The notes below the pieces were generated by a model. That model did not search any database, was not told the DNA's origin, and saw nothing but the letters and a program-made list of their open reading frames with translations. Below, one piece after another: positions 11,473 to 60,295 of a DNA stretch of 64,000 nt. Within the stretch, counting starts at the first letter, position 1. Each line of letters begins with the position of its first letter. The stretch comes from Macrostomum lignano (Eukaryota): contig NIVC01002154.1 in the NCBI GenBank assembly GCA_002269645.1, forward strand, positions 1 through 64,000, in the 5' to 3' direction. The position numbers and the translations under genes are program-made.

Positions 11473-14400
11473 TCACGACACAACTTTAAAGCTTGTCCGC
11501 ACCCTGCAGTCGGCGCAACTCTCGTCGAAATAGTCGCCAACCAGCAGCCCATAGTTGCCGGGCAGCTGGCGCATGAGGCCGGCGCTGCCGTCCCACAGCT
11601 GCATGTCCCTGGCCAGGACGCTGAGGCTCACTGTCGATGCCGAGGAGCCGCTTTGCAGCCGGAATTTGCGAAAGCTGGCCAACCAGATGGTTGGATTTCT
11701 TCCCACGCCAGTCGGCGGGGTCAGGTACGCTTTGAGCACAATCGGGCACTCGGAGATGCCGCTAGTCGAAGCGTTGGCGGCTACCCGCAGGCTGAGGTGG
11801 AGGTCTTGGCCAGCCGAGATGCTCGCGGGAGCCGTCAGGTGGGTCAGCGAGAAGCGGCAGTAGGACAGGCCCTGTGGGGCATCGGTTTGAGCCAAGTTGA
11901 GCACAGATGATGCAGTCCCGCTAGGACCCACCAAACGCAAGGGACATATTCGTTGAATTCCTACTGAGTTTCATCCCAATTTGAGTTTCTAATCGATTAT
12001 TACCGGCGTAACTACGAGTTTCATCGCTTGTCTACGAGTACTCGTAGGAGACAGCCCGTTCCACTGACTAGGATCAGGCAGTGCAGAGCGCACACTGCGT
12101 CTTGTTGGTCCCCACGAGCGAGGATCGCGCAGTACCCAGGGATCGCGCGCAGGAACTCTGGAGCTCTGGTTTTAATCAAGCTCTGATTTACTGAGATACA
12201 AAAGCGCTCTTAGCATTGGCAGCACTGTTTGGTTGAAGAACTTGGTAATTGAGTGTGTTATGCTAAGACTGGCATCTTCTCAGACTGTTTTCTTAAGACT
12301 TCTCAAGACAAAAATCACCCATATTATCGGTGTTTCCTGTCGAATTCTACAAGAAGTTATCATTGTAGTTGGTTTGATCTTGGGACTTGACTTTGGATCC
12401 GCTTCCGGAGATTAAAGTTGCGGCCCAAAGTTTCGAACAAAGCTTCGGCTTTCTGCTCGCAACAGATCCCAAACAACAGGGATCCCAGTCGGAGCTCACC
12501 TGGCCAAAGCGGAACAGAGGCGGAGGCGAGCCGGACCAGGGCTCGGAGAAGCGGTAGGTCTGGTTGCGCGCAGCCAGATCGTAGTCGGTGATGCTGGGCA
12601 GCTGGGCGCGCTCCGACGGCCAGGTGAACGGCAGGGCGGCCGATGGCGAGTAGCGCCCGGTCAGCAAGTTGATGAGCGCCTGCCAGTTCAAGAGTGAATC
12701 AGTTGGTATTTGAAGCAACCTCCCCTACTGCAAGTAGGAGTGAGAGCGTTAGGTAATCAGAAATGGTAGAAGACAATCAAACGACCCGCAGCGACAAAAA
12801 CGTATTCATTTTAGATATCAGGTTAAAGGCTTAACGTTTTTTTTCAAAAACTTCTTCTTGAAATCATTTTCAACTTTTGGCTCTTAGAGGCTACAATGGA
12901 AAATAGACACGGCACTAATAACATTATTAAATACCACCATATGCACTGCACACCGTCAACCCCCACACAATCAAAACCCCCACATTCCAAACCTGCACCC
13001 ACGCACCGGTCCGAAGGTCTGCGCGGGATAGCCGCACCAGACCACCGCTCGTACGCTGTCATTGCCAATCGCCTCGTCCAGGCCGACGGGAGCTCCGGAC
13101 ACCACGGCCAGCACAACCGGCCTGCCGCTGGCGGTCAGCAACCGCAGCAGGGCAAGCTGCCCGTCCGGCAGGGTGAGCTGCCGCCGGTCCAGCGCCTCGG
13201 TCTCGATGTCAACGCTGGTGCCAACAACGGCTAACAGAACGTCGCTCTGCGCGATCAGCGAAGACACCGCGGCCGGATCCTGTCGAGTGCAATAGACTCC
13301 GCCGTCTGTGCAGTAGGTCGCGTGACTGAAGGGCGAGATCAGGGCGGCTGCGCTGGGTGGCTGCGATCAGAAATGCCTCTCCATTGAACTCTCTCTGCTC
13401 TCTTTCATCCGCTCTCTTCTCTACGCCGCTCCTTCCATTCGCTCCACTCTCTTCACTCTGTTTCACTTTGTCCAACTTATCCGCTCTTCACACTCTTGTC
13501 TTACGCTTTCTTCTCTCCTCTCTTCCCTGCTCTCGGCTTCAAACTCTACCATCTGCTATATTAGACATCTGCCAACTCATTTTACTACCCTTCCGTCTCC
13601 ACTCCCAAGCGATCACACCTGACTTTATCAGCACCGAATCGCTCCTTGAGCGCCGGCAGCAGCGGCTGCTCAAACTGCGGCATCCGATTCGGCGAGTAGT
13701 CGCCGTAGACCAGCGACATGTCGTCGGACAGCGGGCCGACCACGCCCAGGCGGAGGCCGGGCCGCTTTATCAGGCCGTCGGGCAGAAAGCCGCCGAGGTT
13801 CTTCAGCAGCACCAGCGAGGTCTGGGCGGCCGTCAAGCTGAGCGCCCGGTGAGCGGCGGACTGGATGAACTGGTCGGGCCGAAGGCTGGAGTAGGGGTTC
13901 AGGGCCGGCGGGTCGAACTCACCCAGCCGCAGGCGGGCAAGGAACAGCGGCCAGGCGGCGGCCCGCAGCTCCGCCTCGGATATCCGGCTGGTGTTCAGCG
14001 CTACTGAGAGCTGCTCAAAGACCACGCAGGACTCGTAGGGGCAGGCGGACAGGTCAAGGTTGACGCCTGCTCTCAGGGACCCGATGGCAGAGCTCTGCGG
14101 GCGGGAAGAATTGGTTGGGAGGGTTGGGAGAAAAACGAAGAGGAGAGAGACCCGATGGAAACGGTACCTAGGCCAAGAAGCGTCGCGTCAAAATAGTTTT
14201 AGAGTCGTTGCAGGTAACACAGGTAAAATACGAAGAAAGCGACTCTAGACGACTCCTAAAAGACAATATGTTACGGTACAAGTTGCCAAAAAGTCAATTC
14301 CATGTGTTTTATTGTCTGCAACTCTAGGGAGAGACGCAAGTGAGTCTGGGGCCGCAGAGTCGTATCTGAGGCGTGCTGGAGTTGCTGTAGAGAATCGCTA

Positions 14401-16518
14401 GAGTCACTAGTGAGTTGTTTTCAATGACGTTTTCTTTGGGAGACAGAGAAGGAAGAGAGGGGAGATGAGGAGCCACGGGGAGATAAGAACGGATGATAAG
14501 GGAGATGGTGAAGTTCTCTGCACGATGAATATTAGGAACTCAAGGTCTTCCAATGAGCGAGGCAGCAGTAAAAGTCACCCCAGCGCACCAGGCGGTCCGC
14601 AAAGTATTTGTGGAAGAGGATGGCGAACTCCAGCGCTCCGGCGTCGCTCACAACGTAGCCGGTGAAGTTCCAGCGCTCCCGAAGGACTCCGCGCAGCAGC
14701 TGAGCGTTGGCGCAGGCGGGCACCCCGTTGATGGCGTTGTAGCTGCACATCACGCTGACACTGCCGGCCTCAACGCAGCGCCGGAACTGCGGCAGGAAAG
14801 TCTGCTCCAGATCCTGTTGGCTGACCAGCGCGTTGAAGCCAAAGCGCGACTCCGGATAGCTGTCGGGGCCGTCGTAGGCGGCGAAGTGCTTGCAGCCGGC
14901 GCCTGTGAGCAGGTAGCGGTTAGTGGCGTTGCCCTGCGGGCAGGTGAGCAGAGGACTCGAACTATAAGGTCACTTGTGAGATGAGCTTCTCAAAAAAGTA
15001 GTCACAAAGGTTAAAAGCTTGCACAAGTCCTTTAACTGTCAGGGTTATTGAGACACAGAATTCACGGTCATTGGATCAGAGATTTCAGGGTAATTGGGTC
15101 ACCGAATTCAGGGTCATTGGGTCAGAGAATTCAGGGTCATTGGGTCAGAGAATTCAGGGTCATTGGATGAAGGAATCCCGGGTCAATGGATCACAATGTT
15201 GCCAGAGCCAACCTGCAGTCCTCCAACGTAGGCGGCCCCCAGCACACCGCTCAGGTGAGGATCTTCCCCGTAGGTCTCCTGGTTGCGGCCCCACAGTGGG
15301 TGCCGCAGGATATTAATCACCGGAGCGAAGCACGTGAGCCCTGTGTGATCGCCGTAGTCGCCCTTGGCGACGAAGTCGTTGTGCTTGGCGCGAACCTCCA
15401 GGCCGGTGGCGCGGCCAACTTGGCTGAGAATGTCCGGATCGAAGGTGGCGGCCAAGCCGACCGCCTGGGGGAAGGAGGTGGCCTGGCCGGACTTGACGGC
15501 GCCGCGCAGGCACTCAGTGTTCCACTGGTACGGCCCGATGCCAAGGCGGGCGATGGCGGGCGCCGGGCCACCAAACGGGCCGACGCCGCCCTTGGCCAGC
15601 TGCTGCACCAGCTCCTGCGGGCAGTGGGGGCTTGCCGGTTTGTTTTCAAGATTTTTTGCGAACATTGTGGGGGCGTTTATGCAACTTTTGGGTCATTGAT
15701 GCCAAAATGTGATTGATGGGCATCAGCACAAGTTACCGGCCGATATTTTGGTTGGGTTGCATCCATATATTTTAGAGGTTTTTTTATGCGGACATCTACC
15801 TGACGCTTTATGTGAACGATTTCAACGTCTTCATCCAGCCATTTTCGGGGATGTTTATGCGGATTTTTGTGAACGATTTAAGGGTGTTTATGTGACTCTT
15901 TTTTACATCCTATGAACCTATTTTCAAGAGTAATTGGGCAGAAGATTTCTAGGGTGATTACAGATTGGCCGGATGTTTTTATATAATAATAATAATTGAC
16001 TACACCTGCCCCAATGCGCAGATGTGCAACCGACAGCTCAGCCGCAGCTATTGTGCTGCGCATCTGAAGGCTGCGTACGGCTGTTCAGTCCCAAGGACTG
16101 GAGGGTCGCCACACACACCCTCAATTACCCTAGTTAATGCTGGTACTCATTTCACAACTGGTTTGACTGAAGCAATGCAGAGTTAAGTGTCTTGCTCAAG
16201 GACACAAATTGTTCAGAGTGGGTCGAGAATCGAACCCCCGACCTTTCAGTCGCTTCAACTCCCTCCGAATGCTTGAACTAAAAACTGTGGATGTTGAATT
16301 CAAGAACGCAATGTTTTTACGATGCAAAAACAGGCGAAAACTGGGGCAGGCTTTCCTGGCTCGGCATTGCCCGCCTTCCCCCTCACCTGAGCAGTCAGGC
16401 GGCCAACCAGATCGTCGGCCCGGTCCGGCCACGGGAGGCTGACATTGCGAAACGGGAAGTCTTCATCAGCCTGGCAGGCCGCCGCCAAGCTCAGTAGCAG
16501 GAGCAGCAATCGAAGCAT
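11473..16518 (-). CDS. Secreted glycoside hydrolase family 3 beta-xylosidase/beta-glucosidase-like protein, 7 exons, ~750 aa
   Basis: Exons 16518-16387, 15614-15213, 14933-14589, 14094-13619, 13325-13007, 12679-12500, 11871-11473; all GT-AG and phase-consistent (2253 nt). Signal peptide MLRLLLLLLSLAAACQA; GH3 motifs WGRNQETYGEDP, CKHFAAY, MCSYNAINGVPAC and GYVVSD (nucleophile Asp); C-terminal Fn3-like domain. Confidence 0.93.
15063..15190. repeat. 23-bp minisatellite (~5 copies) in GH3 intron 2
   Basis: Unit cagggtcattgggtcagagaatt. Confidence 0.85.
15980..16290 (-). mobile_element. tRNA-derived SINE with CORE-like central domain, in GH3 intron 1
   Basis: The minus strand has a B-box GGTTCGATTC (16227-16236), then gtgtccttgagcaagacacttaactctg...tgtgaaatgagtacc, which resembles the MIR/CORE-SINE core, and a (TAT)n tail near 15983-15996. 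Confidence 0.6.
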
Positions 16519-17107: not shown

Positions 17108-18178
17108 ATGAAGCTGGACTACTACGACATCTTGGGGCTGTCGAGAGCCGCAAAGGCCAACGAAATCACCGAGGCTTACAAACAGCTCGCTGAGCAGTGA
17201 GTAATTTGCTAGCGTTAAATAATCAGACTTAAACGCCAAATCGAAATATTGAGGCCTGAAGCAAGTCCAGAGGCTTGGGCAGGTATTAGACATGTATTCT
17301 TACTCGTACCTCTTGAGACTAGGACAGGTGTTAGAAACATAATCACTCATACCTCAATCAGCATGATTCAGCAAAGCTTCTGTGCCCGCAAACCGGTCTC
17401 CAGGTGGCACCCGGCCAACAATCCGGGCTACGAAGCCCGGGCAGAGAAGCGCTTTCGCAGGATTAGCGAGGCCTATCAAATCCTCTCGGACCACAAGCGC
17501 AGGTATCACTACAAAAAGGCGCTGAAGAAGGCGGCCAAGCCCTTTGTGAAAAAGCCCGGTTCCTCCATGCAGTTACTCAACGAGGAATGCGCCGGCCCAG
17601 TACAAGTTGAGAAGGCCAGAAGCGAAAGTAGCAGCAGCCTGAGCAGCGTACTGTCTGAGAGCGGGTCGAAAGCGGCAGAGGAGCCGGTGGTCCTGGGTCA
17701 CAAGTACGCGCACGCGCAGCCCAAGGGACTGCCGGACGAGACGGCCCTGGGCAAAAACCTCATGATTCAGCAGGTGGGGGGAAACACCGTCACGTGCTTC
17801 CCCGAGACGCTGCTGTCGCTACGCAACCCGTACCGCGTCTACAACGAGGTGGTTGGCGGCGCGAAGCCCAACAAGAGTCCGTGGACCTACTGCGAGCAGC
17901 TGGTGGAGTGGCACATTGCCTCCATGGCCAAGCTCACCGACGTCCTTGACGTATTCGGCAACAAGACGGTGATCACCACGATTGACTACACCGATGGCAT
18001 GAAGAACATCAAGGTGAAGCGGAACGGCAAGCTGGTGCAGAACTTCAGCGTCAGCGTGAAGCCGGAGGACTGGCAGGAGGAGGAGCGGGAGACGAAGCGC
18101 GGGGCCGGGCACATCATCATCATTGATGAGGCGCCTGACCCGCCGCCAGGCATGCGGCGGCTGCCCAGAGACCCGTGA
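17108..18178 (+). CDS. DNAJB6/B2-like J-domain protein, copy 1 (HPD replaced by HPA), 287 aa
   Basis: Exons 17108-17196 and 17404-18178 (phase 2). MKLDYYDILGLSRAAKANEITEAYKQLAEQWHPANNPGYEARAEKRFRRISEAYQILSD; later LRNPYRVYNEV and a C-terminal beta-type segment ending NGK. Confidence 0.88.
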
Positions 18179-18900
18179 CGACCGAATCTCACGGCCTATA
18201 CACTTCTAATCATAATTTTCTGTTATTATTTAAATGGAAGATATTACGATATTTGGATTTTGCTTTCTTGAGGCATCATTTTAAGACCGGGCATTTTATA
18301 CCTTTTGGTTTTTCTGAGCTTTACTCTTTCCGAGACTGCCAGGTGTACACGGAATATCGCCGTAAAAGGGACTCAATAATATCAAGGGCACAGCTCCAAA
18401 GACAGCTCGAAATCTACGAGAATAGAAGTTGAAAGTGCATCAAATGAGATAGGAGAGTTATGATCTTTCAGTTTTATTCAATAAATTGACCACTCCACAC
18501 CTGGACTTTTCGGATAAACATTTGAACCCATTACGCTCATATAATCTGCATCAGCTAATTAAACAAATACTATAACTACATTTTATGAGTATATTGGAAG
18601 TTCAGGTGAGAAAATCATTTTCTGCGATTCTGTATTCAAGGTACTTAAAGGCCAATGGTTAGCAGAATCGGCTTTCCATTCCAGGTTTTTAATTCTAGAA
18701 GCCCGTGGATCAAGACGATTATTTTCTGTCTTGGCGAGGAAGTGAAGATGTTTGACAAATAAGACCACAGACTATTCGAGTTCGGTCACGGGTGAAGTAG
18801 CTAAGGCCATCTTTAAGTAGAGCTGATGAAGTACTTAACAGCTCAAGACGGGTGGCCCTTGCAGCGAACTTGAGATTTGTTTCGGAGAAAGCAGGCCACA

Positions 18901-21041
18901 ATGAAGTTGGACTACTATCAAGTTCTGGAGCTGCAGCAAACTTCCGACCCGAAGATAATCAAAGATGCTTACCTGCGATTGGCCACTAAGTGAGTCGCAA
19001 GGACAAATAATTGAAATTGGAGCGTTCTTGATCGAGATTGATAACTGACCAGAATGTCCGATCAAGAGTGCGTTGAGCTGACCAGAATGTCCGGTGAAGA
19101 GTGCGTTGAGCTGACCAGAATGTCCGGTGAAGAGTGCGTTGAGCTGACCAGAATGTCCGGTGAAGAGTGAGTTGAGCTGATCAGAATGTCCGGTGAAGAG
19201 TGAGTTGAGCTGATCAGAATGTCCGGTGAAGAGTGCGTTGAGCTGACCAGAATGTCCGGTGAAGAGTGCGTTGAGCTGAGCAGAATGTCCGGTGAAGAGT
19301 GCGTTGAGCTGACCAGAATGTCCGGTGAAGAGTGCGTTGAGCTGACCAGAATGTCCGGTGAAGAGTGCGTTGAGCTGACCAGAATGTCCGGTGAAGAGTG
19401 AGTTGAGCTGAGCAGAATGTCCGGTGAAGAGTGAGTTGAGCTGACCAGAATGTCTGATGAAGAGTGAGTTGAGCTGACCAGAATGTCCGGTGAAGAGTGC
19501 GTTGAGCTGACCAGAATGTCTGATGAAGAGTGAGTTGAGCTGACCAGAATGTCCGGTGAAGAGTGCGTTGAGCTGACCAGAATGCCTTATTACTCGTAGT
19601 TTGCAGTGGCTTTGGTACTGCAAAAATTGTGACAACAGTCTATCCACAGCCGGCGAGGATCCAAGCAGTCATGCCTGTTCCACTGATGCACTCTCGCAAA
19701 CGAATACGAGGCTTATGCATGCAGGCACACGTTCACACAGGTTGTATAGCGACTCCGGTTCTCATTGTCAGGCATGTATGCCTCAGGGGCTAGGGCTAAC
19801 CGCAGAGCTATTCTGCTCTCCTCCAAAAACTGCAATGCTAGGAGTCAAATTTCACGAGTGTTTTGTAGCGACCAGATAGTCCAATTAGGGGTCTGTGACT
19901 GTGACTCACTGACTAACTAAACTAACAAATTGTGATTAATAACAAACAAACAGTCAGTTGTGGAAATTTAAATATTTCATTCATGCGAAATCGCGAATAC
20001 AAGTTGCAGATTCGGTGTTATTATGCTACTGTCAATAGTGTTCAACTAATGTACGCCGTATTCAATCGTCGCTTTTATTCCTCAATGCGTAAATTCTTCT
20101 ATTCAATCTCGATCTCAAGCAGCACCTGTACACCAGAAATCAATTTGCGTTTCAACCCTGATTATCAGCTTCCCATTGCCTCACTCCGACCAAATCACTC
20201 CCTTGCCAATCTGACACCAAGGTGGCACCCGGAGAACAACCCGGACAACAAGGCGGAGTCTGAGCGGCACTTCTTCCGCATCAGCGAGGCCTTCCAGATT
20301 CTGTACTGCAACGAAAAACGCAAACGCTACCTGCAGTGCCTTTTGAAGTCTAACGCACAGGACCTCGAAAAGAACGACGTTAAATCCAAGGAGTCGCGAG
20401 TCAAGCAGGAATCCACCATGGAACTGGACCAGTTAACCGAGGAATTCGAGACGGCACTCAGGAAGAACTTCCTCAGCGAGAAGTCGGAGAGCGGAGAGGC
20501 GCTCTCTTTCCCGTCCAACCTAATCTCTCTGCGGGATCCGTACAAAGTGCACGTCGAGGCCGTCTGCAACTCGCCGTCTGACCTCAGCGACCGGGCCTTC
20601 TGCGAGCAGCTGGTGCAGCGGCACATCGCCAAGGGCACCCGTCACACCAAGAATGTGGACCCGTTCGGCAACAAGATTGAAATTACCACCGTGCAGTCAA
20701 CTGGCGGTGAGATGACCCTTAATGTAACCCGCAACGGCAAGGAGGTGGACATGAGAATCAAGGGGCTGACCACCAAGTTGACCAACGTCTCCAAGGCAAT
20801 GACAGTCTCGGTTGGTCCCATATCGCAGCGCGGTGGTGGTCCCAGCTCACAGCATGGTGGTCCCAGCTCGCATCATGGTGGTCCCAGCTCGCACCACGGT
20901 GGTCCCAGCTCGCACCACGGTGGTCCCAGCTCGCACCATGGTGGTCCCAGCTCGCACCACGGTGGTCCCAGCTCGCACCGCGGTGGTTCGCACAAAACAA
21001 CATCCGTGTTGACAACAAAAAGTACCAAGACTAACAAGTGA
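18901..21041 (+). CDS. DNAJB6/B2-like J-domain protein, copy 2 (HPE), 302 aa, with GGPSSHH tail
   Basis: Exons 18901-18989 and 20222-21041 (phase 2). MKLDYYQVLELQQTSDPKIIKDAYLRLATKWHPENNPDNKAESERHFFRISEAFQIL. Confidence 0.88.
19044..19586. repeat. 33-bp minisatellite (~16 copies) in the intron of J-copy 2
   Basis: Unit gagtgcgttgagctgaccagaatgtccggtgaa. Confidence 0.95.
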
Positions 21042-21492
21042 ATGGTGGAGGACAGCCAAAAGTTATAAAGGATTTGGAACTGGAAGATAAGAGAGCAAAG
21101 TCTGCTTACGACGAGTGCTTTTGATCGGTGCACTCTCATTTTCTAACTCTCACTCGACCTGCAAACCAAATTTCCGGACACCGAACCTCTGTTATTAAAA
21201 GCGTTTTAAAAAGAATAATTCATTTCAATTCACTGAGCTTCAGTAGCATTGAAGATTTTTTTGTTTATAAGGTCAACCCAAGACATTTTAGTTCAAAAAA
21301 ATATACAGATCTTGATTTTGCACTAAACCAACAATCCTTTTCAACACTCGCTACGACACCTTACGACATGTGCTAATTAAAGTATTTTAGCTCGCGCAAG
21401 CGTAGTCTATGGCACAACCGTATTTGCGTGCATATTCTGGAAAGCACACAAGTGATGCTAATTAGAATAGTAAGATTAGCAAAGACGAAACC

Positions 21493-22340
21493 ATGTCCAA
21501 CCCCGAGGACTTTTACGCCATTCTGGAGGTGCCTCCATCGGCCACGGCCAGGAGATTAAGGAGGCGTACAAGCGACTGGCACTAAGGTGAGATTTTACCA
21601 AAGATACCAAAGAGATACCTCATACCAAAGAGAAGTAAAGATGACATTGTGAATGCTAGATGTCAGTAAAGTGCGTGATGTCTAGTGATGTCAGTAAATG
21701 ACAAAAGGCGAAGTACCTGTAAGAATGTCAGCAGGGTGTATGAAAGGCTCGTAATTAAGACTCGAGAAATGTATCAATTAAGTGCCAGCAAAGCACCAGA
21801 AAAAGATGAGTTCAGCAAGATGCGCTGAAAAGGCGGAAAACGGTCATTGCCAACCCTAACTCACCCGCGCACTGCACTTCGCACCACTGCTCCAGGTGGC
21901 ACCCGGACAAGAACCCGAACAACCGACCGGAGGCCGAGCTGCGATTCCGCAAGCTGTCCGAGGCCTACCAAGTGCTGTCGGACCCGAGCCGCCGGGCGGA
22001 CTATGACCGCACTCGCCGCAGCTCCCACGGTCCGCGGCCGGGTGGCGGCAGCTTCAGGTGGAGCAGCACGACAGCCGAGCAGCTGCACCGGAACCTCTGG
22101 AGCGCCTTCCGCGACCCGTTCTTCGTCTATAACGAAGTGTTCAGCAGTGCCGGCGTCGGCAACGATGGAATTGTCGGGCAGTTCAGCGCGGTCAGCGAGA
22201 CGACCACGGAAGACGGGCAGGGCAACCGGACGGTCGTCAGAACGACAGTCGAGAACGGGGTAAAGGTGACGACGGTGTTCAAAAACGGCGAGCAGACGGA
22301 GCAGACCACCACGGCTCTGAACCAGCTGGCTCGGCGCTGA
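21493..22340 (+). CDS. DNAJB6/B2-like J-domain protein, copy 3 (canonical HPD) with an apparent 1-nt frameshift in exon 1
   Basis: Exons 21493-21586 and 21896-22340. [18 protein letters not shown] / [50 protein letters not shown], with [12 protein letters not shown]. As written, the ATG frame stops at 21583-21585; adding one base near 21547-21550 gives 179 aa. Confidence 0.8.
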
Positions 22341-22570
22341 GCTGAAATCAAATCATCAAGTATCAACTGACTACTGGAAGTAGCCTGAGCAGCGTTTCTG
22401 TAAACTTTTACCAATTTCATTTAATAAAAAATAGCCTTCGTTTTGCATTCAAAACTGCCGATTTGAATAAGAAAACCAAAATGCACTCTATGGCAAGAAT
22501 TCGATCCCGAGTCCGTATATAGATTTGAGACAAAATCTGGAAACTGATCCGCGCTCTGACGGCAAGATTC

Positions 22571-24450
22571 ATGGCCGAGGATTTCTACTACGAGGTGCTG
22601 GGCGTGTCGGGCTTGTCCAGCAAGCAGAGCATCGAATCTGCCTACAGACAGCTGCGTGAGCGGTGAGTTCTCGCCTGCTTTGAAAAGCTTTGACATATTA
22701 GAACTAATATTCAATTTAGATTAGCAGTCCGTGCTACACTACTAAATCTATAATTAGCTAGATAAGCATTCCACTCCGTAATTCCAGCTGGCATACTGGC
22801 TAGATTCGCAATCCACTCCGTTATTCCAGCTGGCATACTGGCTAGATTCGCAATCCACTCCGTACTTCTAGCTGGCATACTGGCTAGATTCGCAATCCAC
22901 TCCGTACTTCTAGCTGGCATACTGGCTAGATTCGCAATCCACTCCGTACTTGCAGCTGGCATACTGGCTGGATTCGCAATCCACTCCGTTATTCCAGCTG
23001 GCATATTGGCAAGATTAGCAATCCACTCCGTAATTCCAGCTGGCATATTGGCTGGATTAGCAATCCACTCCGTAATTCCAGCTGGCATATTGGCTGGATT
23101 AGCAATCCACTCCGTAATTCCAGCTGGAATGTTGGCTGGATTAGCAATCCACTCTGTAATTCCAGATGGCACCCTAGCAACAACCCTGGCAACGAGTACG
23201 AGGCGTCAAGGCGCACACAGCAGATCTACCAGGCCTACATGACCCTGGCCGAGCCCTACCGAAGACAAACCTACGACGGACTGCGAAGCAACCAATACTT
23301 CAGGCAGAGACTGCGGGACCACTGCAGCGGCTGGGCCGGCCATCTGGGCTACGACTCGACCCGGCGTGACCTGAACTACAACGACTCGACTGCGCGCCTT
23401 ATCCATGAGTTCGCGCCAACCGTGCTGCTGCTATTCTATCCAGTGGAGCCCAGCGTGTCGATGCCCGCCTACCGCGGCTCGATGCCGTTCGGTCAGACGC
23501 AGGCGCCGATGATGCACCAGCAGCGCCCAATGAGCTTCGGTGCGCCGAAAAGCTTTTCGGGCGTTCCCAAGCTTATGGGCTCGGCCATGGTCGGCGGCCT
23601 GGCTGGCGGCCTCGCCGGCGGCCTGGCCAGGAGCGGCCCCAATATTGGCATTCCGAAGTGGGGTGGCCTGTCGAGGGGTGGCCTGTCCAGGGCTGGCCTG
23701 TCCAGGGGTGGCCCGTCCAAGGATGGCCTGTCCAGAGGGCTGTTCGTGGGCGGCTTGCTCGGGGGACTGTTCAGAGGAGGCCTGTCTGGGGGCGGCCGGT
23801 CGTGGGGCGCTAAGCCTCGGCGCGCCAAGCCGTGGATTGCCAACAGAATGATGCAGCCCAGATGCTCCCCAGACGAGGAGGACGACGATGATCAAGATGA
23901 GAGCGATCACGACATGGATCACGATCAATTCGATCACGATATGAGTCATGACTTATTTGATCACGGTATGAGCCATGACCAGTTCGATCACGGTATGAGC
24001 CATGACCAGTTTGATCACGGCATGAGCCATGACCAGTTCGATCACGGTATGAGCCATGACCAGTTCGATCACGGTATGAGTCATGACCAGTTTGATCACG
24101 GCATGAGCCATGACCAGTTCGACCACGGTATGAGCCATGACCAGTTCGATCACGGTATGAGCCATGACCAGTTTGATCACGGTATGAGCCATGACCAGTT
24201 TGATCACGGTATGAGCCATGACCAGTTTGATCACGGTATGAGCCATGACCAGTTCGATCACGGTATGAGCCATGACCAGTTTGATCACGGTATGAGCCAT
24301 GACCAGTTCGATCACGGTATGAGCCATGACCAGTTCGATCACGGTATGAGCCATGACCAGTTCGATCACGGTATGAGCCATGACCAGTTCGATCACGGTA
24401 TGGACTATAATGGCGACTTTGATGGTGGCTTCGACGGAGGAGCAGACTGA
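22571..24450 (+). CDS. Divergent J-domain protein, copy 4 (HPS), 458 aa, with Gly/Arg-rich linker and DHGMSHDQF repeat tail
   Basis: Exons 22571-22662 and 23166-24450 (phase 2, total 1377 nt). MAEDFYYEVLGVSGLSSKQSIESAYRQLRERWHPSNNPGNEYEASRRTQQIYQAYMTLAEPYRRQTYD. Confidence 0.82.
22769..23171. repeat. 42-bp minisatellite made of the splice-acceptor region of J-copy 4
   Basis: Unit ccactccgtaattccag-ctggcatactggctagattcgcaat; the last copy ends ttccag|atggcaccc, the acceptor that gives the uninterrupted J-domain. Confidence 0.93.
23905..24402 (+). repeat. 27-bp coding repeat DHGMSHDQF (16 exact peptide copies plus 2 degenerate)
   Basis: gatcacggtatgagccatgaccagttc repeated from 23959 to 24390; the nucleotide variants are all third-position synonymous. 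Confidence 0.95.
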
Positions 24451-24676
24451 CAAAAATCAACGCAGTGACCAGCAGCTGACCAAACTGTGACTTTCATTTT
24501 ATCATTCATTTGAGTGCCGATAAATATAAAATCTATTCTGAGAAGTCATGTTTCAGGAACGACTGTACATTGTGGTGGGGCAGGGAAGGTCGGGAGCGAG
24601 TGTACGTTGGGGTGAGGCAGAGAACGCCGGGAGCGAGTGAAAATTGGGGTGAGAGAGGGAAAATCGGAAGTGTACA

Positions 24677-25262
24677 ATGGGGTGGGGCAGGGAGGGCCGG
24701 GAGCGAGTGTACATAGGGGTTGGGCAGGGAGGGCCGGGAGCGAGTGTACATTGGGGTTGGGCAGGGAGGGCCGGGAGCGAGTGTACATTAGGGTTGGGCA
24801 GGGAGGGCCGGGAGCGAGTGTACATTAGGGTTGGGCAGGGAGGGCCGGGAGCATTGGGGTTGGGCAGGGAGGGCCGGGAGCGAGTGTACATTGGGGTTGG
24901 GCAGGGAGGGCCGGGAGCGAGTGTACATTAGGGTTGGGCAGGGAGGGCCGGGAGCGAGTGTACATTGGGGTTGGGCAGGGAGGGCCGGGAGCGAGTGTAC
25001 ATTAGGGTTGGGCAGGGAGGGCCGGGAGCGAGTGTACATTGGGGTTGGGCAGGGAGGGCCGGGAGCGAGTGTACATAGGGGTTGGGCAGGGAGGGCCGGG
25101 AGCAAGTGTACATTAGGGTTGGGCAGGGAGGGCCGGGAGCGAGTGTACATTGGGGTTGGGCAGAAAAGGCCGGGAGCGAGTGTACATTGGGGTTGGGCAG
25201 GGAGGGCCGGGAGCGAGTGTACATTAGGGTTGGGCAGGGAAGGCCTGGAACGAGTGTACCTT
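24677..25262. repeat. 37-bp G-rich minisatellite between J-copy 4 and ARMC8
   Basis: Unit gggcagggagggccgggagcgagtgtacattggggtt. Confidence 0.95.
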
Positions 25263-25943
25263 GGGATGAGGCAGGAAAGGCCTGGAACGAGTGCATGCTA
25301 GCAAATGGTTACGATTAGAGCTATTCGAGTTTAAGTTATTTAGCTTGCAATATGCAGTTAATGTTTACAGCTAAGATTACTGTTTAGACATTTATGAGAT
25401 AAACCGATAAGTACTTATATGAGAAAGTGGTTAAACAGTTATAAGCTCGGCAGGGCAGCTGTCCTCCAACTGTCCCAAGTACTGTATTACGGGGTCTTAT
25501 GCTAGGACACCTTTTTCCTGCAGTTCTGAGATCAAATAAGCAAAGAAATGATTTAAGTTAAATTTTTCAAAAAACGATCTGATGTATTTTTGAGTATGCC
25601 AGCGCAATGACCATCATCAGTGAGAGCGGTGTGTGCTAACAGGTTCAGCAATTGTTAGAATTTCAATGAACTGATGTTCAGTTTAAAAAGCACTGCAATC
25701 GAAAACAATAAACTGGTCGTTATAAAAAGGGGAGCAGACGGGGTCGCGAGGTCAGAGGGGTAAAATAGGCGGGAAGCGCTCTGTCAGACAAGTTCCGCTG
25801 TGGCCAATAGACTGCGCCACGAGGCAGTAAAAGCAGCAACTAGAATGGGATAAAATTGGGAATAAAATGTCGCAATGTAACACTTAGACTAAAGATTGAA
25901 CAAATGGCGATTGAATAGTGTTAGGCAGTTTAGAATAAATAAA

Positions 25944-31666
<5,723 letters not shown>

Positions 31667-39981: not shown

Positions 39982-52122
<12,141 letters not shown>

Positions 52123-54239: not shown

Positions 54240-54695
54240 ATACATAATGGACTGGGGGTTGGGGTGGGGCTTGGCGTACATAATGGATTGGGGTGGGGCT
54301 TGGTGTACATAATGGATTGGAGGTTGGGGTGGGGCTTGGCGTACATAATGGATTGGGGTGGGGCTTGGCGTAAATAATGGATTGGGGGTTGGGCTTGGCG
54401 TAAATAATGGATTGGGGTGGGGCTTGGCGTAAATAATGGATTGGGGGTTGGGCTTGGCGTAAATAATGGATTGGGGTGGGGCTTGGTGTACATAATGGAT
54501 TGGGGTGAGGCTTGGTGTACATAATGGATTGGAGTGGGGCTTTGCGTACATAATGGATTGGGGAGCTTGGCGTACATAATGGATTGGGGAGCTTGGCGTA
54601 CATAATGGATTGGGGGTTGGGGTGGGGCTTGGCGTACATAATGAATTGGGGAGCTTGGCGTACATAATGGATTGGAGTGAGGCTTGGCGTAAATA
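54240..54695. repeat. ~25-35 bp minisatellite (ggcttggcgtacataatggattggggt)
   Basis: Directly visible. Confidence 0.9.
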
Positions 54696-55829
54696 ATGAA
54701 ATAATGGACGCCTAAGTAAGGAGGCGGGGCTAGAGTAAATTTCGGCGGGCATAAATGATGAGGCAACCAAGACAATAGAATGCCGCAAACAAGTAGGAGT
54801 TCACAGTGGAATGAAGCAGCGCATGAAAAAACTACAGCAGCCAGCATCCGTTTCAGAGAGACATCAAAGGCGAGGCGGCTAACTGCCCCATGCGGTTGAC
54901 AGGCGGACACGGCCGGCCGGAAAAAACAAAATGAGCCCGGCGCGGAGGCCGCTCCAGAGGAGGAACAGCTGGAACAGCCAAGACCGACCGCCAACCCCGA
55001 GGAGCGTAGCTTTATTTCTTTGAGTTAAAGTGAAGAAAAACGCGATGAATCCGCTAGACAAAATAAAGGCAACGCAGTTGATAAAGAGAGCTTTACAAGT
55101 GTAATGTTAAGAATTTCGGCGTGATCATAATTACAATTTTAAAAACACTTGAAAAAAATTATAACTTCACGTATTAAAACGAATCAATTTTAATAATAAG
55201 TCACAAATATTTTATTTATTTTGTTTATCTTTTCCATTTCCGGCTGAAAAGATTTTCGAAACAATGGCTCATACAGGAGTGCACAGCGGCTGTACTGACG
55301 CCGGCACATACGAAATAATATAGCGTCGCTCTGGATCGAGTAGGCTACGGCCCCCTGGATTACACATGCAGGCAAGACACATTTCAGGGTGGAAAATTAC
55401 TGGATGGCACATTATATCCTCCTTACATACATCCTCCTTGGTGAGGAATGAAGGGGTGCAAAACAGAGGGAAGGAGAAGCCACAGGAAACAGAAGTACGG
55501 CCAGACCTGCGTCTTTTGTTAATTAGCGCGCTCTCAAGGAGCCCGTTGCCAGGGACGCCAATGCCTCTCCTCTCTGCACCCCACCTCTCCTTCCCCCTAA
55601 GACTGAAGCGGACAATTAGCAATCGGAACAAGGACCACTAGTTTAGACGTCTTTGCATCGGAAGCGATGCAACGAGATGCGAAAATAGATAGAAATAGAT
55701 GGGCTTTGGGCTCTGGCACGGACCAACTGTTGACAGTTGCAACAGTGCATGGCAACCAGCAATTTTTAGCATCCAAGCTGCATTCATTCCCGATAAATAT
55801 GCACGAAACAAAACAGCAGGACTGCACAG

Positions 55830-57457
55830 CACACTTTGATCTTGAAAGTGCGAGCCTCAACCCTTCTGCTGGCAGTTCTGTGCTGCCTCGCCCTGCGCCA
55901 CTCCATGGCTGCCGAGTTCGCTCCCCTGGGCTGCTTCATCGACTTCTCGGAAGATGGGAGCCGCGACCTCAACGGCCTGGCGGGCTGGTCCAACGTCTCT
56001 GCGGCTACGGCAACTTCAAGTACTTCGGCGTCCAATTCCACATCGAATGCTATTGCGGCAACTCGTACGGCAGTTTTGGCGCGGCACCGGACGCCGACTG
56101 CTACGCCAAATGCGCTGGCAACCCCGCCCAGATGTGCGGAGGAGCAATGCGGATCTCCGTGTACCGCCAGATCTACCTGCGCTCCGGTGAGGCAACAGCT
56201 TGATTACAGAATTTGGTGCAGTGCAGCGTTTAGGCCTACCTTGACCGACTATTCAAAAGCATTCGATATTAGTTAATAGAATATTAGAAAATATCTTAGC
56301 AAGTTTGATGAAAATCGAATTTAGCTGTTTGTCCCTTCAACCAGCAATAAACTTGTGAAACCCTCAGACCAAGACACCCTTCAACCAGCAATAAACTTGT
56401 GAAACCCTCAGACCAAGACACCCTTCAACCAGCAATAAACTTGTGAAACCCTCAGACCAAGACACCCTTCAACCAGCAATAAACTTGTGAAACCCTCAGA
56501 CCAAGACACCCTTCAACCAGCAATAAACTTGTGAAACCCTCAGACCAAGACACCCTTCAACCAGCAATAAACTTGTGAAACCCTCAGACCAAGACACCCT
56601 TCAACCAGCAATAAACTTGTGAAACCCTCAGACCAAGACACCCTTCAACCAGCAATAAACTTGTGAAACCCTCAGACCAAGACACCCTTCAACCAGCAAT
56701 AAACTTGTGAAACCCTCAGACCAAGACACCCTTCAACCAGCAATAAACTTGTGAAACCCTCAGACCAAGACACCCTTCAACCAGCAATAAACTTGTGAAA
56801 CCCTCAGACCAAGACACCCTTCAACCAGCAATAAACTTGTGAAACCCTCAGACCAAGACACCCTTCAACCAGCAATAAACTTGTGAAACCCTCAGACCAA
56901 GACACCCTTCAACCAGCAATAAACTTGTGAAACCCTCAGACCAAGACACCCTTCAACCAGCAATAAACTTGTGAAACCCTCAGACCAAGACACCCTTCAA
57001 CCAGCAATAAACTTGTGAAACCCTCAGACCAAGACACCCTTCAACCAGCAATAAACTTGTGAAACCCTCAGACCAAGACACACGCTCGCTGCGAATAAAC
57101 CGCTCCATACTTGCACCAGATCAATAACACTGTATGCTTTCTCAGCGACATTGGGCCTGCAATTAGTTTTTATCGTTACTATCAGCGGAACTTCCAAGAT
57201 CTCAACCGTGCAAATTTCCCTTGTTCCCGTGCAATGTGTTCACTCGGTCCGAAAAAGTCTACCTGAACGTGACATCCTCTAGTGGGCCCCTCTACCGGAC
57301 CGTGCAGCCCGTGACGGACCTGACCGACTGCATACTCAGCTGCGGTGCCGACTGCCAGGCCGTGCTGTTCCACCTGGACGCCTGCTACCTGCTGAGACTG
57401 CCCGTTCTGCCGCACGAGCTACAGGACGTACCTGGGGAATTCTTCCTTCGCGTGTGA
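55830..57457 (+). pseudogene. Signal peptide + WSC carbohydrate-binding domain + Cys-rich PAN/apple-like domain gene, frameshifted within WSC (pseudogene or assembly error)
   Basis: LLLAVLCCLAL signal and LGCFIDF...RDL are in one frame; RLCGYGNFKYFGVQFHIECYCGNSYG...CAGNPAQMCGGAMRISVY is in another, switching near 55986-55997. Donor after 56186, acceptor before 57186, stop at 57457. Confidence 0.65.
56333..57081. repeat. 44-bp perfect minisatellite (17 copies) in the WSC gene intron
   Basis: Unit cccttcaaccagcaataaacttgtgaaaccctcagaccaagaca; no spacers and no variants seen. Confidence 0.96.
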
Positions 57458-59829: not shown

Positions 59830-60295
59830 TGGCGTGGTCTGGGGTGCGTGTTGAGGTTAGAGTTGGAGGGCTTGGTCTGGGGTGCGTGTTAAGGTTAGAG
59901 TTGGAGGGCTTGGTCTGGGGTGCGTGTTAAGGTTAGAGTTGGAGGGCTTGGTCTGGGGTGCGTGTTAAGGTTAGAGTTGGAGGGCTGGGTCTGGGGTGCG
60001 TGTACATTGGGGTTAGAGTTGGAGGGCTGGGTCTGGGGTGCGTGTACATTGGGGTTAGAGTTGGAGGGCTGGGTCTGGGGTGCGTGTACATTGGGGTTAG
60101 AGTTGGAGGGCTGGGTCTGGGGTGCGTGTACATTGGGGTTAGAGTTGGAGGGCTTGGTCTGGGGTGCGTGTACATTGGGGTTAGAGTTGGAGGGCTTGGT
60201 CTGAGGCGTGTGTTCATTGAGGTTAGAGTTGGAGGGCTTGGGTGCGTGTACATTGGGGTTAGAGTTGGAGGGCTTGGTCTGGGGTTGGAGCGCTG
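59830..60295. repeat. 38/42-bp G-rich minisatellite
   Basis: Unit ggggtgcgtgtacattggggttagagttggagggctgggtct. Confidence 0.93.

What the first reader, a model, noticed from the sequence alone, without database searches (positions are those of the whole stretch)
23905..24450. His/Met/Asp nonapeptide repeat (DHGMSHDQF)x16 with synonymous-only variation
Seen: 16 identical peptide copies, while the DNA varies only at silent sites (TTC/TTT, GGT/GGC, AGC/AGT, GAT/GAC). They follow a GGLSR-rich basic linker and an acidic DEEDDDD run, and the protein ends GDFDGGFDGGAD. Established: His- and Met-rich repeats are typical Cu/Zn/Ni-binding tracts. Inference: the silent-only pattern suggests selection on the peptide, making this a J-like domain fused to a multivalent metal-binding or condensate-forming tail, an architecture I do not recognise.
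Basis: partly seen in the sequence, partly recalled or inferred. Interest (0 to 1): 0.7.

Follow-up and report, generated by a model that had tools for sequence, protein, structure and literature searches.

The report
Flatworm J-like protein, His/Met/Asp repeat tail
The repeat is real: it is a young, copy-number-unstable coding minisatellite forming the disordered, very acidic, histidine-rich tail of a transcribed J-domain-like protein of the flatworm Macrostomum lignano. Metal binding is plausible but untested, and the "selection on the peptide" argument is only weakly supported.

Summary
**Observation: confirmed.** Window 23959-24390 holds 16 perfect DHGMSHDQF units (27 nt each). Two degenerate units precede them (23905-23958). 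The DNA varies at only four sites, all silent C/T.

**Source.** The window is the start of contig NIVC01002154.1 of Macrostomum lignano (Mlig_3_7).

**Gene.**
- It has two exons, 22571-22662 and 23166-24450, encoding 458 aa. This equals the RNA-seq-derived GenBank product exactly.
- It is the last of four tandem DNAJB6-like J-protein paralogs, whose motifs read HPA, HPE, HPD and HPS.
- It keeps a J fold (Pfam 7e-15) but has HPS in place of the catalytic HPD.
- It lacks the DNAJB6 C-terminal domain.
- It ends in a +14 Gly/Arg block followed by a -53 His/Asp/Met tail.

**Evolution.**
- 30% of the window is tandem repeat. Noncoding arrays reach 100% identity over 17 copies, so peptide identity mostly reflects recent expansion.
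- A second genomic copy is 99.6-99.8% identical in unique DNA. It has 14 units, two of them with non-synonymous Ser changes, plus a 4-aa deletion beside HPS.
- Pooled across both copies, 5 variable sites are silent and 2 are replacement (P about 0.001-0.03). That is only modest evidence for constraint.

**Relatives.** No protein elsewhere shares the tail.

**Function.** Multivalent Cu/Zn binding is an inference from composition only.

**Verdict.** New variant of a known kind, with modest interest.

The parts
22571..22662 (+). Gene D exon 1 (MAEDFYYEVLGV...QLRE + 2 nt of Arg31): helices I-II of the J-like domain
   Evidence: Donor CG|GTGAGT. The spliced product equals the GenBank product. Pfam DnaJ covers residues 6-68.
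22663..23165 (+). Gene D intron (GT...AG, phase 2), at the same position as in the three paralogs; contains a 42-nt minisatellite at about 22757-23165
   Evidence: Copy number is 9.9 here and 10.9 in the sister contig.
23166..24450 (+). Gene D exon 2, from WHPS... to the stop codon
23170..23178 (+). HPS tripeptide in place of the catalytic HPD of J domains
   Evidence: The sister copy additionally lacks the next four residues (NNPG).
23569..23865 (+). Gly/Arg-rich basic linker (residues 166-264; 28% Gly, net charge +14.5), including 12-nt and 15-nt (GGLSR) micro-arrays
23866..23904 (+). Acidic run SPDEEDDDDQDES, which grades into the oldest, degenerate repeat units
   Evidence: TRF row 23882-23943, period 27, 77% matches.
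23905..23958 (+). Two degenerate units, DHDMDHDQF and DHDMSHDLF
23959..24390 (+). 16 perfect DHGMSHDQF units (27 nt each), forming a coding minisatellite
   Evidence: The sister copy has 14 units, 12 of them perfect.
24391..24450 (+). Partial unit plus unique C-terminus DHGMDYNGDFDGGFDGGAD and the stop codon
17108..18178 (+). Paralog A (exons 17108-17196 and 17404-18178; 287 aa; HPA)
   Evidence: The same product is annotated on the sister contig.
18901..21041 (+). Paralog B (exons 18901-18989 and 20222-21041; 302 aa; HPE). A 33-nt minisatellite lies in the intron, and the C-terminus carries GGPSSHH x7 (20835-20987)
21493..22340 (+). Paralog C (exons 21493-21586 and 21896-22340; HPD). It is DNAJB6-like over its full length. 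In this contig exon 1 is 94 nt, which is a frameshift

Best explanation
**Shown**
- The array is a coding minisatellite in the last exon of a real, transcribed gene of Macrostomum lignano.
- That gene is the fourth member of a head-to-tail cluster of DNAJB6-derived J-protein paralogs. All four share one phase-2 intron immediately before the W of WHP(D).
- This member keeps the J-domain fold but has HPS instead of HPD.
- It has lost the DNAJB6-type C-terminal domain.
- It carries instead a two-block tail: a Gly/Arg-rich basic block (+14), then a 194-residue block of 26% Asp, 19% His, 10% Met and 10% Phe (net charge about -53 at pH 7.4 and about -35 at pH 6). A single-sequence AlphaFold2 model gives the tail no secondary structure and low confidence (pLDDT 32-38), which is consistent with disorder.
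- The array is evolutionarily young and unstable. A second genomic copy that is 99.6-99.8% identical in unique DNA differs in unit number (14 against 16) and in variant pattern.

**Inferred**
- The units arose by slippage or unequal exchange. This process is rampant in this genome, and only in-frame outcomes survive in an exon. The peptide identity is therefore mostly recency and homogenisation.
- Weak purifying selection spares His, Met, Asp and Phe. Both replacement changes seen fall on the Ser.
- With the catalytic Asp missing, the J-like domain probably cannot stimulate Hsp70 ATPase and serves as a docking or scaffold module.
- The tail most likely acts as a low-affinity, high-capacity, pH-sensitive binder of Cu and Zn (possibly Ni). 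The ligands would be the His-x3-His pairs, the flanking Asp carboxylates and one Met per unit. Copy number would set the valency.
For: **Gene model and expression**
- the spliced model equals the GenBank product on NIVC01002154.1.
- the assembly is M. lignano Mlig_3_7, and its GenBank annotation derives from an RNA-seq-guided transcriptome.

**J domain and paralogs**
- Pfam DnaJ, 55.3 bits against a cut-off of 27.8.
- the four paralogs read HPA, HPE, HPD and HPS, with the core residues invariant.
- the intron position is shared by all four.
- paralog C aligns to human DNAJB6 through its C-terminal domain (2.6e-21). D matches only through the J domain, and its best hits are DNAJB8, DNAJB6 and DNAJB2.

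**Age and instability of the array**
- 29.7% of the window is tandem repeat. Intronic arrays show 3.0% and 6.3% variant cells spread over all phases. Noncoding arrays of 17 and 15 copies show 0% and 0.3%.
- the sister copy is 99.6-99.8% identical in unique DNA. All six large arrays differ in copy number, and D' has 14 units.

**Constraint**
- silent-site excess, 4 of 4 in D and 5 of 7 pooled.

**Tail properties**
- composition and charge.
- pLDDT 32-38 and no secondary structure in the tail.

**Chemistry precedent**
- His-Met clusters with neighbouring Asp in the disordered N-terminus of human CTR1 bind Cu(II) and Cu(I) (PMC8867124; PMC9117721).
- The HPD motif is required for Hsp70 ATPase stimulation, and HPD-corrupted 'type IV' J-like proteins exist (PMC10349383).

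**Family context**
- The M. lignano HSP40 family is greatly expanded, with 123 members (PMC9559072).
Against: - No metal-binding, expression-level, localisation or Hsp70 data exist for this protein. The metal role rests on composition only.
- There is one Met per 9 residues, which is not the MxM/MxxM spacing of known Cu(I) 'Mets' motifs.
- The protein has no signal peptide or membrane segment. It would sit in the reducing, metal-buffered cytosol or nucleus, where free Cu and Zn are scarce.
- The sister copy tolerates two replacement changes, an altered last unit (DHGM to DQNM) and a 4-aa deletion next to HPS. This is also what relaxed constraint would look like.
- No ortholog was found, so conservation of the tail cannot be shown.
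- The silent-site excess rests on about 4-7 events. It is partly explained by CpG decay and a transition bias.
- The AlphaFold run used a single sequence, so low pLDDT is weak evidence of disorder.
Confidence: 0.55

Rival explanations
1. Neutral by-product. The tail is an in-frame minisatellite expansion tolerated in a disordered C-terminus of a redundant, functionally decaying paralog. The His/Met/Asp composition is an accident of the seed sequence (an ancestral acidic D/H-rich stretch) and has no specific role.
For: - Minisatellites cover 29.7% of the window, and noncoding arrays are equally or more homogeneous.
- Copy number and unit sequence differ between copies that are 99.6-99.8% identical elsewhere. 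The differences include two replacement changes and a 4-aa deletion in the key J loop.
- HPD is lost.
- The neighbouring paralog C is frameshifted in this contig.
- The HSP40 family has 123 members, so redundancy is likely.
- No relatives share the tail.
- Paralog B has likewise grown an in-frame GGPSSHH array.
Against: - The J fold is still recognisable at 55 bits although it is only 36-47% identical to its paralogs. The non-repeat reading frame of 277 codons is intact. This argues for long-term purifying selection on the gene as a whole.
- The gene is present in a transcript-derived annotation on both contigs.
- Silent sites are in excess, and both replacements are confined to the one residue least likely to matter.
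Confidence: 0.3
2. Charge-patterned condensate or scaffold protein. The +14 Gly/Arg block and the -53 acidic tail drive self-association by complex coacervation. His protonation would make this pH-switchable, largely independently of metals. The J-like domain would recruit or dock the assembly.
For: - The blocks are strongly segregated: +14.5 against -53, and the tail charge changes by about 18 units between pH 7.4 and 6.0.
- The model gives the tail no secondary structure and low confidence, which is consistent with disorder.
- The repeats are multivalent.
- There is precedent for His-rich sequences undergoing pH- and Zn-dependent phase separation in a marine invertebrate protein (PMC13022425).
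Against: - The case is purely compositional.
- The net charge of the whole protein is -35, which disfavours simple self-coacervation without counter-ions or partners.
- No data exist on localisation or assembly.
Confidence: 0.1
3. Artefact. The repeat number or reading frame is an assembly or annotation error, or the CDS is merely the longest ORF of a non-coding or precursor transcript, and no such protein is made.
For: - The assembly is PacBio-based, repeat-rich and redundant.
- Paralog C shows a 1-bp homopolymer difference between contigs that could be an assembly error.
- Two reverse-strand frames are also open across the array. This shows that open frames across a stop-free unit are cheap.
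Against: - The same architecture is assembled independently on two contigs, with an intact frame in both.
- Of the three forward frames only the one continuous with the J-domain exon is open across the array.
- The splice sites are canonical and at the position conserved in all four paralogs.
Confidence: 0.05

Closest known systems
DNAJB6 / DNAJB8 / DNAJB2-type class B J-domain proteins
   Same: - The J domain of D is most similar to these (best PDB hits are an 'HCG3 gene' DnaJ J-domain entry, DNAJB8, DNAJB6 and DNAJB2, E 7.5e-13 to 1.5e-9).
- Its neighbour, paralog C, matches human DNAJB6 along the whole protein, including the C-terminal domain.
- A Gly-rich segment follows the J domain.
   Different: - D has HPS, not HPD.
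- The Gly-rich block is Gly/Leu/Ser/Arg with only 2% Phe, and it starts about 100 residues after the J domain.
- The S/T-rich region and the beta-rich C-terminal domain are absent. The acidic His/Met/Asp array takes their place.
J-like ('type IV') proteins with a corrupted HPD motif (for example Plasmodium type IV JDPs, human DNAJB13, E. coli DjlB)
   Same: The J fold is recognisable but the catalytic triad is mutated. C-terminal regions are diverse, often repetitive, and of unknown function. Whether these proteins act through Hsp70 is debated (PMC10349383).
   Different: - D has an independent origin, by tandem duplication of a DNAJB6-like gene in a flatworm.
- None of those proteins is known (from my own knowledge) to carry a His/Met/Asp nonapeptide array.
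His/Met/Asp copper-binding clusters of the CTR1 N-terminus, and the Met/His/Asp repeats of bacterial CopA/PcoA-type copper-resistance proteins (the latter recalled from memory)
   Same: Short, disordered clusters combine His imidazoles, Met thioethers and Asp carboxylates, and they bind Cu(II) and Cu(I) (PMC8867124, PMC9117721). The local D-H-x-M-S-H-D pattern resembles those clusters.
   Different: - Those segments are extracellular or periplasmic parts of transporters and oxidases, with MxM/MxxM spacing.
- Here there is one Met per 9 residues and no signal peptide or membrane anchor.
- There are 16-18 near-perfect tandem copies, fused to a chaperone-type domain.
- The resemblance is compositional. 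No homology was found.
His-rich metal-storage or metallochaperone tails (Hpn, the SlyD, HypB and UreE tails, the Helicobacter GroES/HspA tail) and other His-rich tandem-repeat proteins (histidine-rich glycoprotein, histidine-rich Ca-binding protein, Plasmodium HRP2, the copper-binding octarepeat region of PrP); named from memory
   Same: A His-rich, low-complexity extension is appended to a folding helper or carrier. It binds divalent metal multivalently and with low affinity. In HRC the acidic and His residues occur together.
   Different: The tail has a different unit sequence, a different taxon and a different partner domain. No sequence relationship was detected, and no evidence for metal binding exists here.
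Coding minisatellites (for example the PRDM9 zinc-finger array, mucin VNTRs)
   Same: The unit length is a multiple of three. Copies lie head to tail, with a homogenised interior and degenerate edges. Copy number and variant order differ between near-identical genomic copies.
   Different: The encoded unit is a 9-residue disordered peptide rather than a folded domain or a glycosylation module.

Membership tests
J-domain protein (Pfam PF00226 DnaJ) | Sequence matches the four-helix J-domain profile above the curated threshold | tested here: met
   55.3 bits against a cut-off of 27.8, E 7e-15, residues 6-68 matching profile positions 2-63 of 63.
J-domain protein (functional co-chaperone) | Invariant His-Pro-Asp tripeptide in the loop between helices II and III | tested here: not met
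   the tripeptide is HPS. The sister copy also lacks the next 4 residues. D is therefore J-like ('type IV'), not a canonical J domain.
J-domain protein (functional co-chaperone) | Stimulates Hsp70 ATPase | not testable with these tools
   This needs a biochemical assay.
DNAJB6/DNAJB8 subfamily | J domain closest to this subfamily | tested here: met
   after an 'HCG3 gene' DnaJ J-domain entry, the best solved-structure hits are DNAJB8, DNAJB6 and DNAJB2.
DNAJB6/DNAJB8 subfamily | G/F-rich linker directly after the J domain | tested here: inconclusive
   a Gly-rich block (28% Gly) exists, but it has only 2% Phe, is Arg-rich, and starts at residue 166.
DNAJB6/DNAJB8 subfamily | S/T-rich region and C-terminal domain homologous to DNAJB6 (6u3r) | tested here: not met
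   the alignment to 6u3r stops at residue 69. In contrast, paralog C aligns to residue 186 of 6u3r.
Cu-binding His/Met clusters (CTR1-type 'Mets' motifs) | Clustered His, Met and Asp in a disordered segment | tested here: met
   19% His, 10% Met, 26% Asp; pLDDT 32-38.
Cu-binding His/Met clusters (CTR1-type 'Mets' motifs) | MxM / MxxM spacing of methionines | tested here: not met
   there is one Met per unit, that is M-x8-M.
Cu-binding His/Met clusters (CTR1-type 'Mets' motifs) | Extracellular or periplasmic exposure | tested here: inconclusive
   The sequence starts directly with the J domain (MAEDFYYEVLGV), with no evident signal peptide or transmembrane segment. No dedicated predictor was available.
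Cu-binding His/Met clusters (CTR1-type 'Mets' motifs) | Measured metal binding | not testable with these tools
   This needs ITC, ICP-MS or spectroscopy.
Coding minisatellite | Head-to-tail units of 10-100 nt, with a period that is a multiple of three, in frame with the flanking CDS | tested here: met
   period 27, 0% indels. Of the three forward frames only the CDS frame is open across the array.
Coding minisatellite | Copy-number and variant-order differences between alleles or recent duplicates | tested here: met
   17.6 against 15.3 TRF copies. There are 16 perfect units against 12 perfect units plus 2 variants, on a background 99.6-99.8% identical in unique DNA.
Coding minisatellite | Homogeneous interior with degenerate edge units | tested here: met
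   the units at 23882-23958 are degenerate, and the last unit is partial.

The most novel reading that the evidence does not exclude
The tail is a genuinely selected, metal- and pH-responsive multivalent module. Cu or Zn loading, or acidification, switches the His/Asp/Met array between an extended polyanion and a cross-linked or condensed state that engages the adjacent Gly/Arg block. This turns an Hsp70-uncoupled J-like scaffold into a metal buffer or metal-stress sensor of a marine flatworm. The unstable unit number would then be an evolvable dial for capacity.
Probability: 0.15. Interest if true: 0.6.

Novelty: new variant of a known kind. Interest (0 to 1): 0.3.

Why it matters
If the tail binds metals, it would be a natural, genetically tunable multivalent Cu/Zn-binding peptide attached to a chaperone-derived domain. 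M. lignano has routine RNAi and transgenesis and is already used for marine metal toxicology, so the idea could be tested cheaply.

The locus also gives a clean example of how J-protein families diversify:
- a tandem duplication series with the motifs HPA, HPE, HPD and HPS;
- loss of the catalytic Asp;
- replacement of the client-binding C-terminus by minisatellite-born low-complexity tails.

If the tail has no function, the locus is still a useful caution. In repeat-saturated genomes, identical peptide repeats with only silent variation are expected from recent expansion. They should not by themselves be read as selection.

Tried and rejected
1. **Unspliced ORF look-up.** The ORF 23239-24447 is not on record. 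The spliced model was found instead.
2. **Full phmmer scan against 1.84 billion representatives.**
   - It gave 411 hits, all confined to the repeat part of the query.
   - The eight sequences inspected are unrelated tandem-repeat proteins, several with a 9-residue unit, with units such as DSGMQHGSV, SDLVDGAVS and QQYQHQIST.
   - None of the 150 best hits has the nonapeptide within 3 substitutions.
   - I rejected these hits as periodicity and composition artefacts.
3. **Word-indexed searches.**
   - Residues 1-270 gave only one generic DnaJ.
   - The tail within the full-length range gave nothing.
   - The tail alone, in the fragment length range, gave nothing.
   - A local control shows that a true relative would score 1e-59 to 1e-83.
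   - The gene's own cluster is evidently withheld from these libraries. 'No relatives' therefore means none besides itself and its sister copy.
4. **Rfam and tRNA scans of the window.** Both returned nothing.
5. **AlphaFold2 on a single sequence.** There is no confident structure in the tail, so I ran no fold search.
6. **Guesses at the organism before identification.** I considered a dinoflagellate, another protist and a lamprey, because of the repeat load and the tandem same-strand genes. All were dropped once the contig was identified as M. lignano.
7. **Reverse-strand ORFs across the array (216 and 166 aa).** I rejected them as trivial consequences of a unit that has no stop codon in those frames. 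They have no annotation and no upstream coding continuity.
8. **dN/dS between the two genomic copies.** The unique CDS differs at only 3 of 819 sites, all inside the GGLSR micro-array, so there is no power.
9. **Register-based variant counts.** These are unreliable for arrays with indels (the 24-, 35- and 20-mers), and I did not use them.
Full report
**1. The observation**

- The frame that starts at 23239 reads two degenerate units: DHDMDHDQF at 23905-23931 and DHDMSHDLF at 23932-23958.
- Sixteen identical DHGMSHDQF units follow at 23959-24390.
- The protein then ends DHGMDYNGDFDGGFDGGAD, with the stop codon at 24448-24450.
- TRF calls the array period 27, 17.6 copies, 94% matches and no indels.
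- Within the 16 perfect units only positions 3, 9, 15 and 27 vary. That is 10 of 432 cells, all C/T transitions at third codon positions and all silent.

**2. Where the window comes from, and the gene model**

The exon is preceded by a canonical acceptor (ttccag|A TGG CAC CCT AGC). Upstream of a 503-nt GT-AG intron lies a 92-nt first exon, MAEDFYYEVLGVSGLSSKQSIESAYRQLRER.

The spliced 458-aa protein is letter for letter the product annotated on NIVC01002154.1 of GCA_002269645.1. Window coordinates equal contig coordinates.

The accession series NIVC belongs to the Macrostomum lignano Mlig_3_7 assembly. Its GenBank annotation was made from an RNA-seq-guided transcriptome, Mlig_RNA_3_7_DV1.v1.coregenes (PMC5730564). 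The repeat is therefore inside an assembled mRNA. I infer this from the paper's methods; I have not seen the reads.

**3. What kind of protein it is**

- Pfam finds a complete DnaJ domain at residues 6-68 (55.3 bits, E 7e-15) and nothing else.
- The catalytic tripeptide reads HPS.
- The gene is the last of four same-strand paralogs. All are interrupted at the same place and phase, just before the Trp of WHP(D):
  - A, 17108-18178, HPA
  - B, 18901-21041, HPE
  - C, 21493-22340, HPD
  - D, 22571-24450, HPS
- C aligns with human DNAJB6 through its C-terminal domain (E 2.6e-21).
- D matches DNAJB8, DNAJB6 and DNAJB2 only through the J domain.
- After the J-like domain D has about 95 residues with no recognisable family. 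Next comes a Gly/Arg block (residues 166-264, 28% Gly, +14.5) containing 12- and 15-nt micro-arrays. An acidic run follows, and then the array.
- The last 194 residues are 26% Asp, 19% His, 10% Met and 10% Phe. Net charge is about -53 at pH 7.4 and -35 at pH 6.
- AlphaFold2 on a single sequence gives the tail pLDDT 32-38 with no secondary structure.
- The HPD Asp is required for stimulating Hsp70 ATPase, and HPD-corrupted J-like proteins form a recognised class (PMC10349383).
- The M. lignano HSP40 family is reported as exceptionally large, with 123 members (PMC9559072).

**4. Is the silent-only pattern evidence of selection?**

*Context.* Tandem repeats cover 29.7% of this window, in 55 arrays. 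The genome paper gives 15% simple and tandem repeats genome-wide.

*Noncoding arrays are just as homogeneous.*
- The 44-mer at 56333-57081 has 17 identical copies.
- The 23-mer at 48197-48558 has 1 variant cell in 345.
- The intronic 33-mer of B has 3.0% variant cells, and the intronic 42-mer of D has 6.3%. In both, the variants are spread over all three phases and only about 43% are transitions.

At 2.3% variant cells the coding array is not unusually conserved at the DNA level. Sixteen identical peptides mostly reflect recent expansion and homogenisation.

*What is unusual* is that all four variable sites are silent. P is 0.004-0.008 with transitions only, and about 2-5e-4 with a uniform or intron-like spectrum. 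The commonest variant, TTC to TTT, is a CpG transition across the unit junction.

**5. A natural replicate**

The DV1 line carries duplicated chromosomes, and the assembly holds 180 Mb of duplicated blocks. Contig NIVC01004548.1 (L003) carries the same four-gene cluster.

Unique DNA is nearly identical between the two contigs:

| Region | Differences |
|---|---|
| Non-repeat CDS of D | 3 of 819, all in the GGLSR micro-array |
| C-D spacer | 1 of 230 |
| 3' flank of D | 0 of 105 |
| Gene A with its intron | 2 of 1071 |

All six large arrays differ in copy number:

| Array | Window | L003 |
|---|---|---|
| 33-mer | 16.4 | 40.4 |
| 21-mer | 7.3 | 6.3 |
| 42-mer | 9.9 | 10.9 |
| 27-mer | 17.6 | 15.3 |
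| 37-mer | 20.3 | 15.3 |
| 22-mer | 26.2 | 12.2 |

The sister gene D' (436 aa, also annotated) differs from D as follows:
- It has 14 core units: 12 perfect, one DHGMGHDQF and one DHGMNHDQF.
- It has a silent CAA, two TTT and one GGC.
- Its final partial unit begins DQNM rather than DHGM.
- It has a 12-nt deletion that turns WHPSNNPGNEYE into WHPSNEYE.

So silent-only variation is not a property of the locus. Pooling both copies, 5 variable sites are silent and 2 are replacements (P 0.0005-0.03 depending on the model). Both replacements hit the Ser, while His, Met, Asp and Phe never change. I read this as modest evidence that the reading frame and the ligand-type residues are under some constraint. 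It lies on top of a very high mutational turnover of the array.

**6. Relatives**

No other protein shares the tail or the middle region.
- The exhaustive phmmer scan of 1.84 billion representatives returned only periodicity artefacts.
- Word-indexed searches of 5.8 billion clusters found nothing for the tail at either length range.
- For residues 1-270 they found only a generic DnaJ.
- A control shows that a real relative would score 1e-59 or better.
- The gene's own cluster is evidently withheld from these libraries. The absence statement therefore covers other species and other paralogs. It cannot speak for unsampled Macrostomum species.

**7. Is D a live gene?**

Its J domain is only 36-47% identical to those of its paralogs. 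Even so it keeps every core position and a 55-bit Pfam score, and 277 non-repeat codons remain open. That is hard to reconcile with long neutral decay.

Against this, the deletion in D' beside HPS, and the loss of the Asp, show that the Hsp70-activating loop is no longer protected.

**8. Mechanism**

*Shown:* the architecture, the charge pattern, the low-confidence structure-free model of the tail (consistent with disorder), and the instability of the array.

*Inferred:*
- Each unit offers His-x3-His, which lies on one face if helical. It also offers two Asp and one Met. This is the ligand set that binds Cu(II) and Cu(I) in the disordered CTR1 N-terminus (PMC8867124; PMC9117721).
- I therefore favour a low-affinity, high-capacity, pH-sensitive Cu/Zn-binding tail on an Hsp70-uncoupled J-like scaffold.
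- Caveats: the Met spacing is not the MxM/MxxM type, the protein looks intracellular, and nothing has been measured.

*Main rival:* a tolerated in-frame expansion with no specific role.

*Second rival:* charge-driven, pH-switchable self-association of the basic and acidic blocks. His-rich Zn- and pH-dependent phase separation has precedent (PMC13022425).

**9. Verdict**

- The protein is a J-like (HPD-less) derivative of a DNAJB6-type gene. Its tail has no known counterpart, so it is a new variant of a known kind.
- It sits in a genome where such coding minisatellites are to be expected.
- Interest is modest (0.3). It would rise if orthologs keep the peptide or if metal binding is shown.

Noticed in passing
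window 17108-24450 (+): Four tandem, same-strand DNAJB6-like J-protein paralogs share one phase-2 intron just before WHP. Their catalytic motifs read HPA, HPE, HPD and HPS, so only one of the four keeps the canonical Asp. Spacers are short (230 nt between C and D), which may mean polycistronic, trans-spliced expression, as is known in this species.
   Followed up: partly
window about 21545 (gene C exon 1): Exon 1 of the only HPD paralog is 94 nt here and 95 nt on the sister contig (CC against CCC in ...GCCACGGCC(C)AGGAG...). In this contig the reading frame is therefore broken. This is either a real frameshift in one duplicate or a homopolymer assembly error. A, B and C are not among the genes annotated on this contig.
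   Followed up: partly
window 20835-20987 (gene B C-terminus): A second in-frame His-containing coding minisatellite, GGPSSHH x7 (21-nt unit), ends paralog B. It has 7.3 copies here and 6.3 on the sister contig.
   Followed up: partly
L003 16866-16890 (sister copy D'): A 12-nt deletion between short direct repeats removes NNPG right after HPS (WHPSNNPGNEYE becomes WHPSNEYE). This shortens the helix II-III loop of the J-like domain.
   Followed up: yes
window 19045-19584 and 22757-23171: The introns of paralogs B and D each carry a large minisatellite (33-mer and 42-mer). The 33-mer has 16 copies here and 40 on the sister contig, while the surrounding unique DNA is more than 99.6% identical.
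   Followed up: yes
window 24556-25293, 26114-26683, 54259-54698, 59831-60285: Several separate minisatellites (units of 37, 22, 29/59 and 42 nt) share a G-rich core followed by GTGTACAT or GCGTACAT. They look like members of one dispersed satellite family, or derivatives of a mobile element.
   Followed up: no
window 56333-57081, 43752-46150, 28118-28275: Some noncoding arrays are strikingly homogeneous or long: a 44-mer x17 at 100% identity, a 25-mer x98 (2.4 kb), and a 25-mer x6.3 at 100% identity. Overall 29.7% of the window is tandem repeat.
   Followed up: partly
window about 11473-16518 (-), 55667-56203 (+), 62405-63352 (-): Other genes are present. A multi-exon GH3 beta-glucosidase with an Fn3-like domain is annotated with a 750-aa product. 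There is a WSC-domain ORF. There is also a large single-exon piece of an M13 (neprilysin-type) metallopeptidase with HEVTH.
   Followed up: partly
window 23810-24460 (-) and 23953-24453 (-): Two reverse-strand frames are open across the whole array (216 and 166 aa). This is because the 27-nt unit has no stop codon in those frames. It is a reminder that long ORFs over repeats are not evidence of coding.
   Followed up: yes
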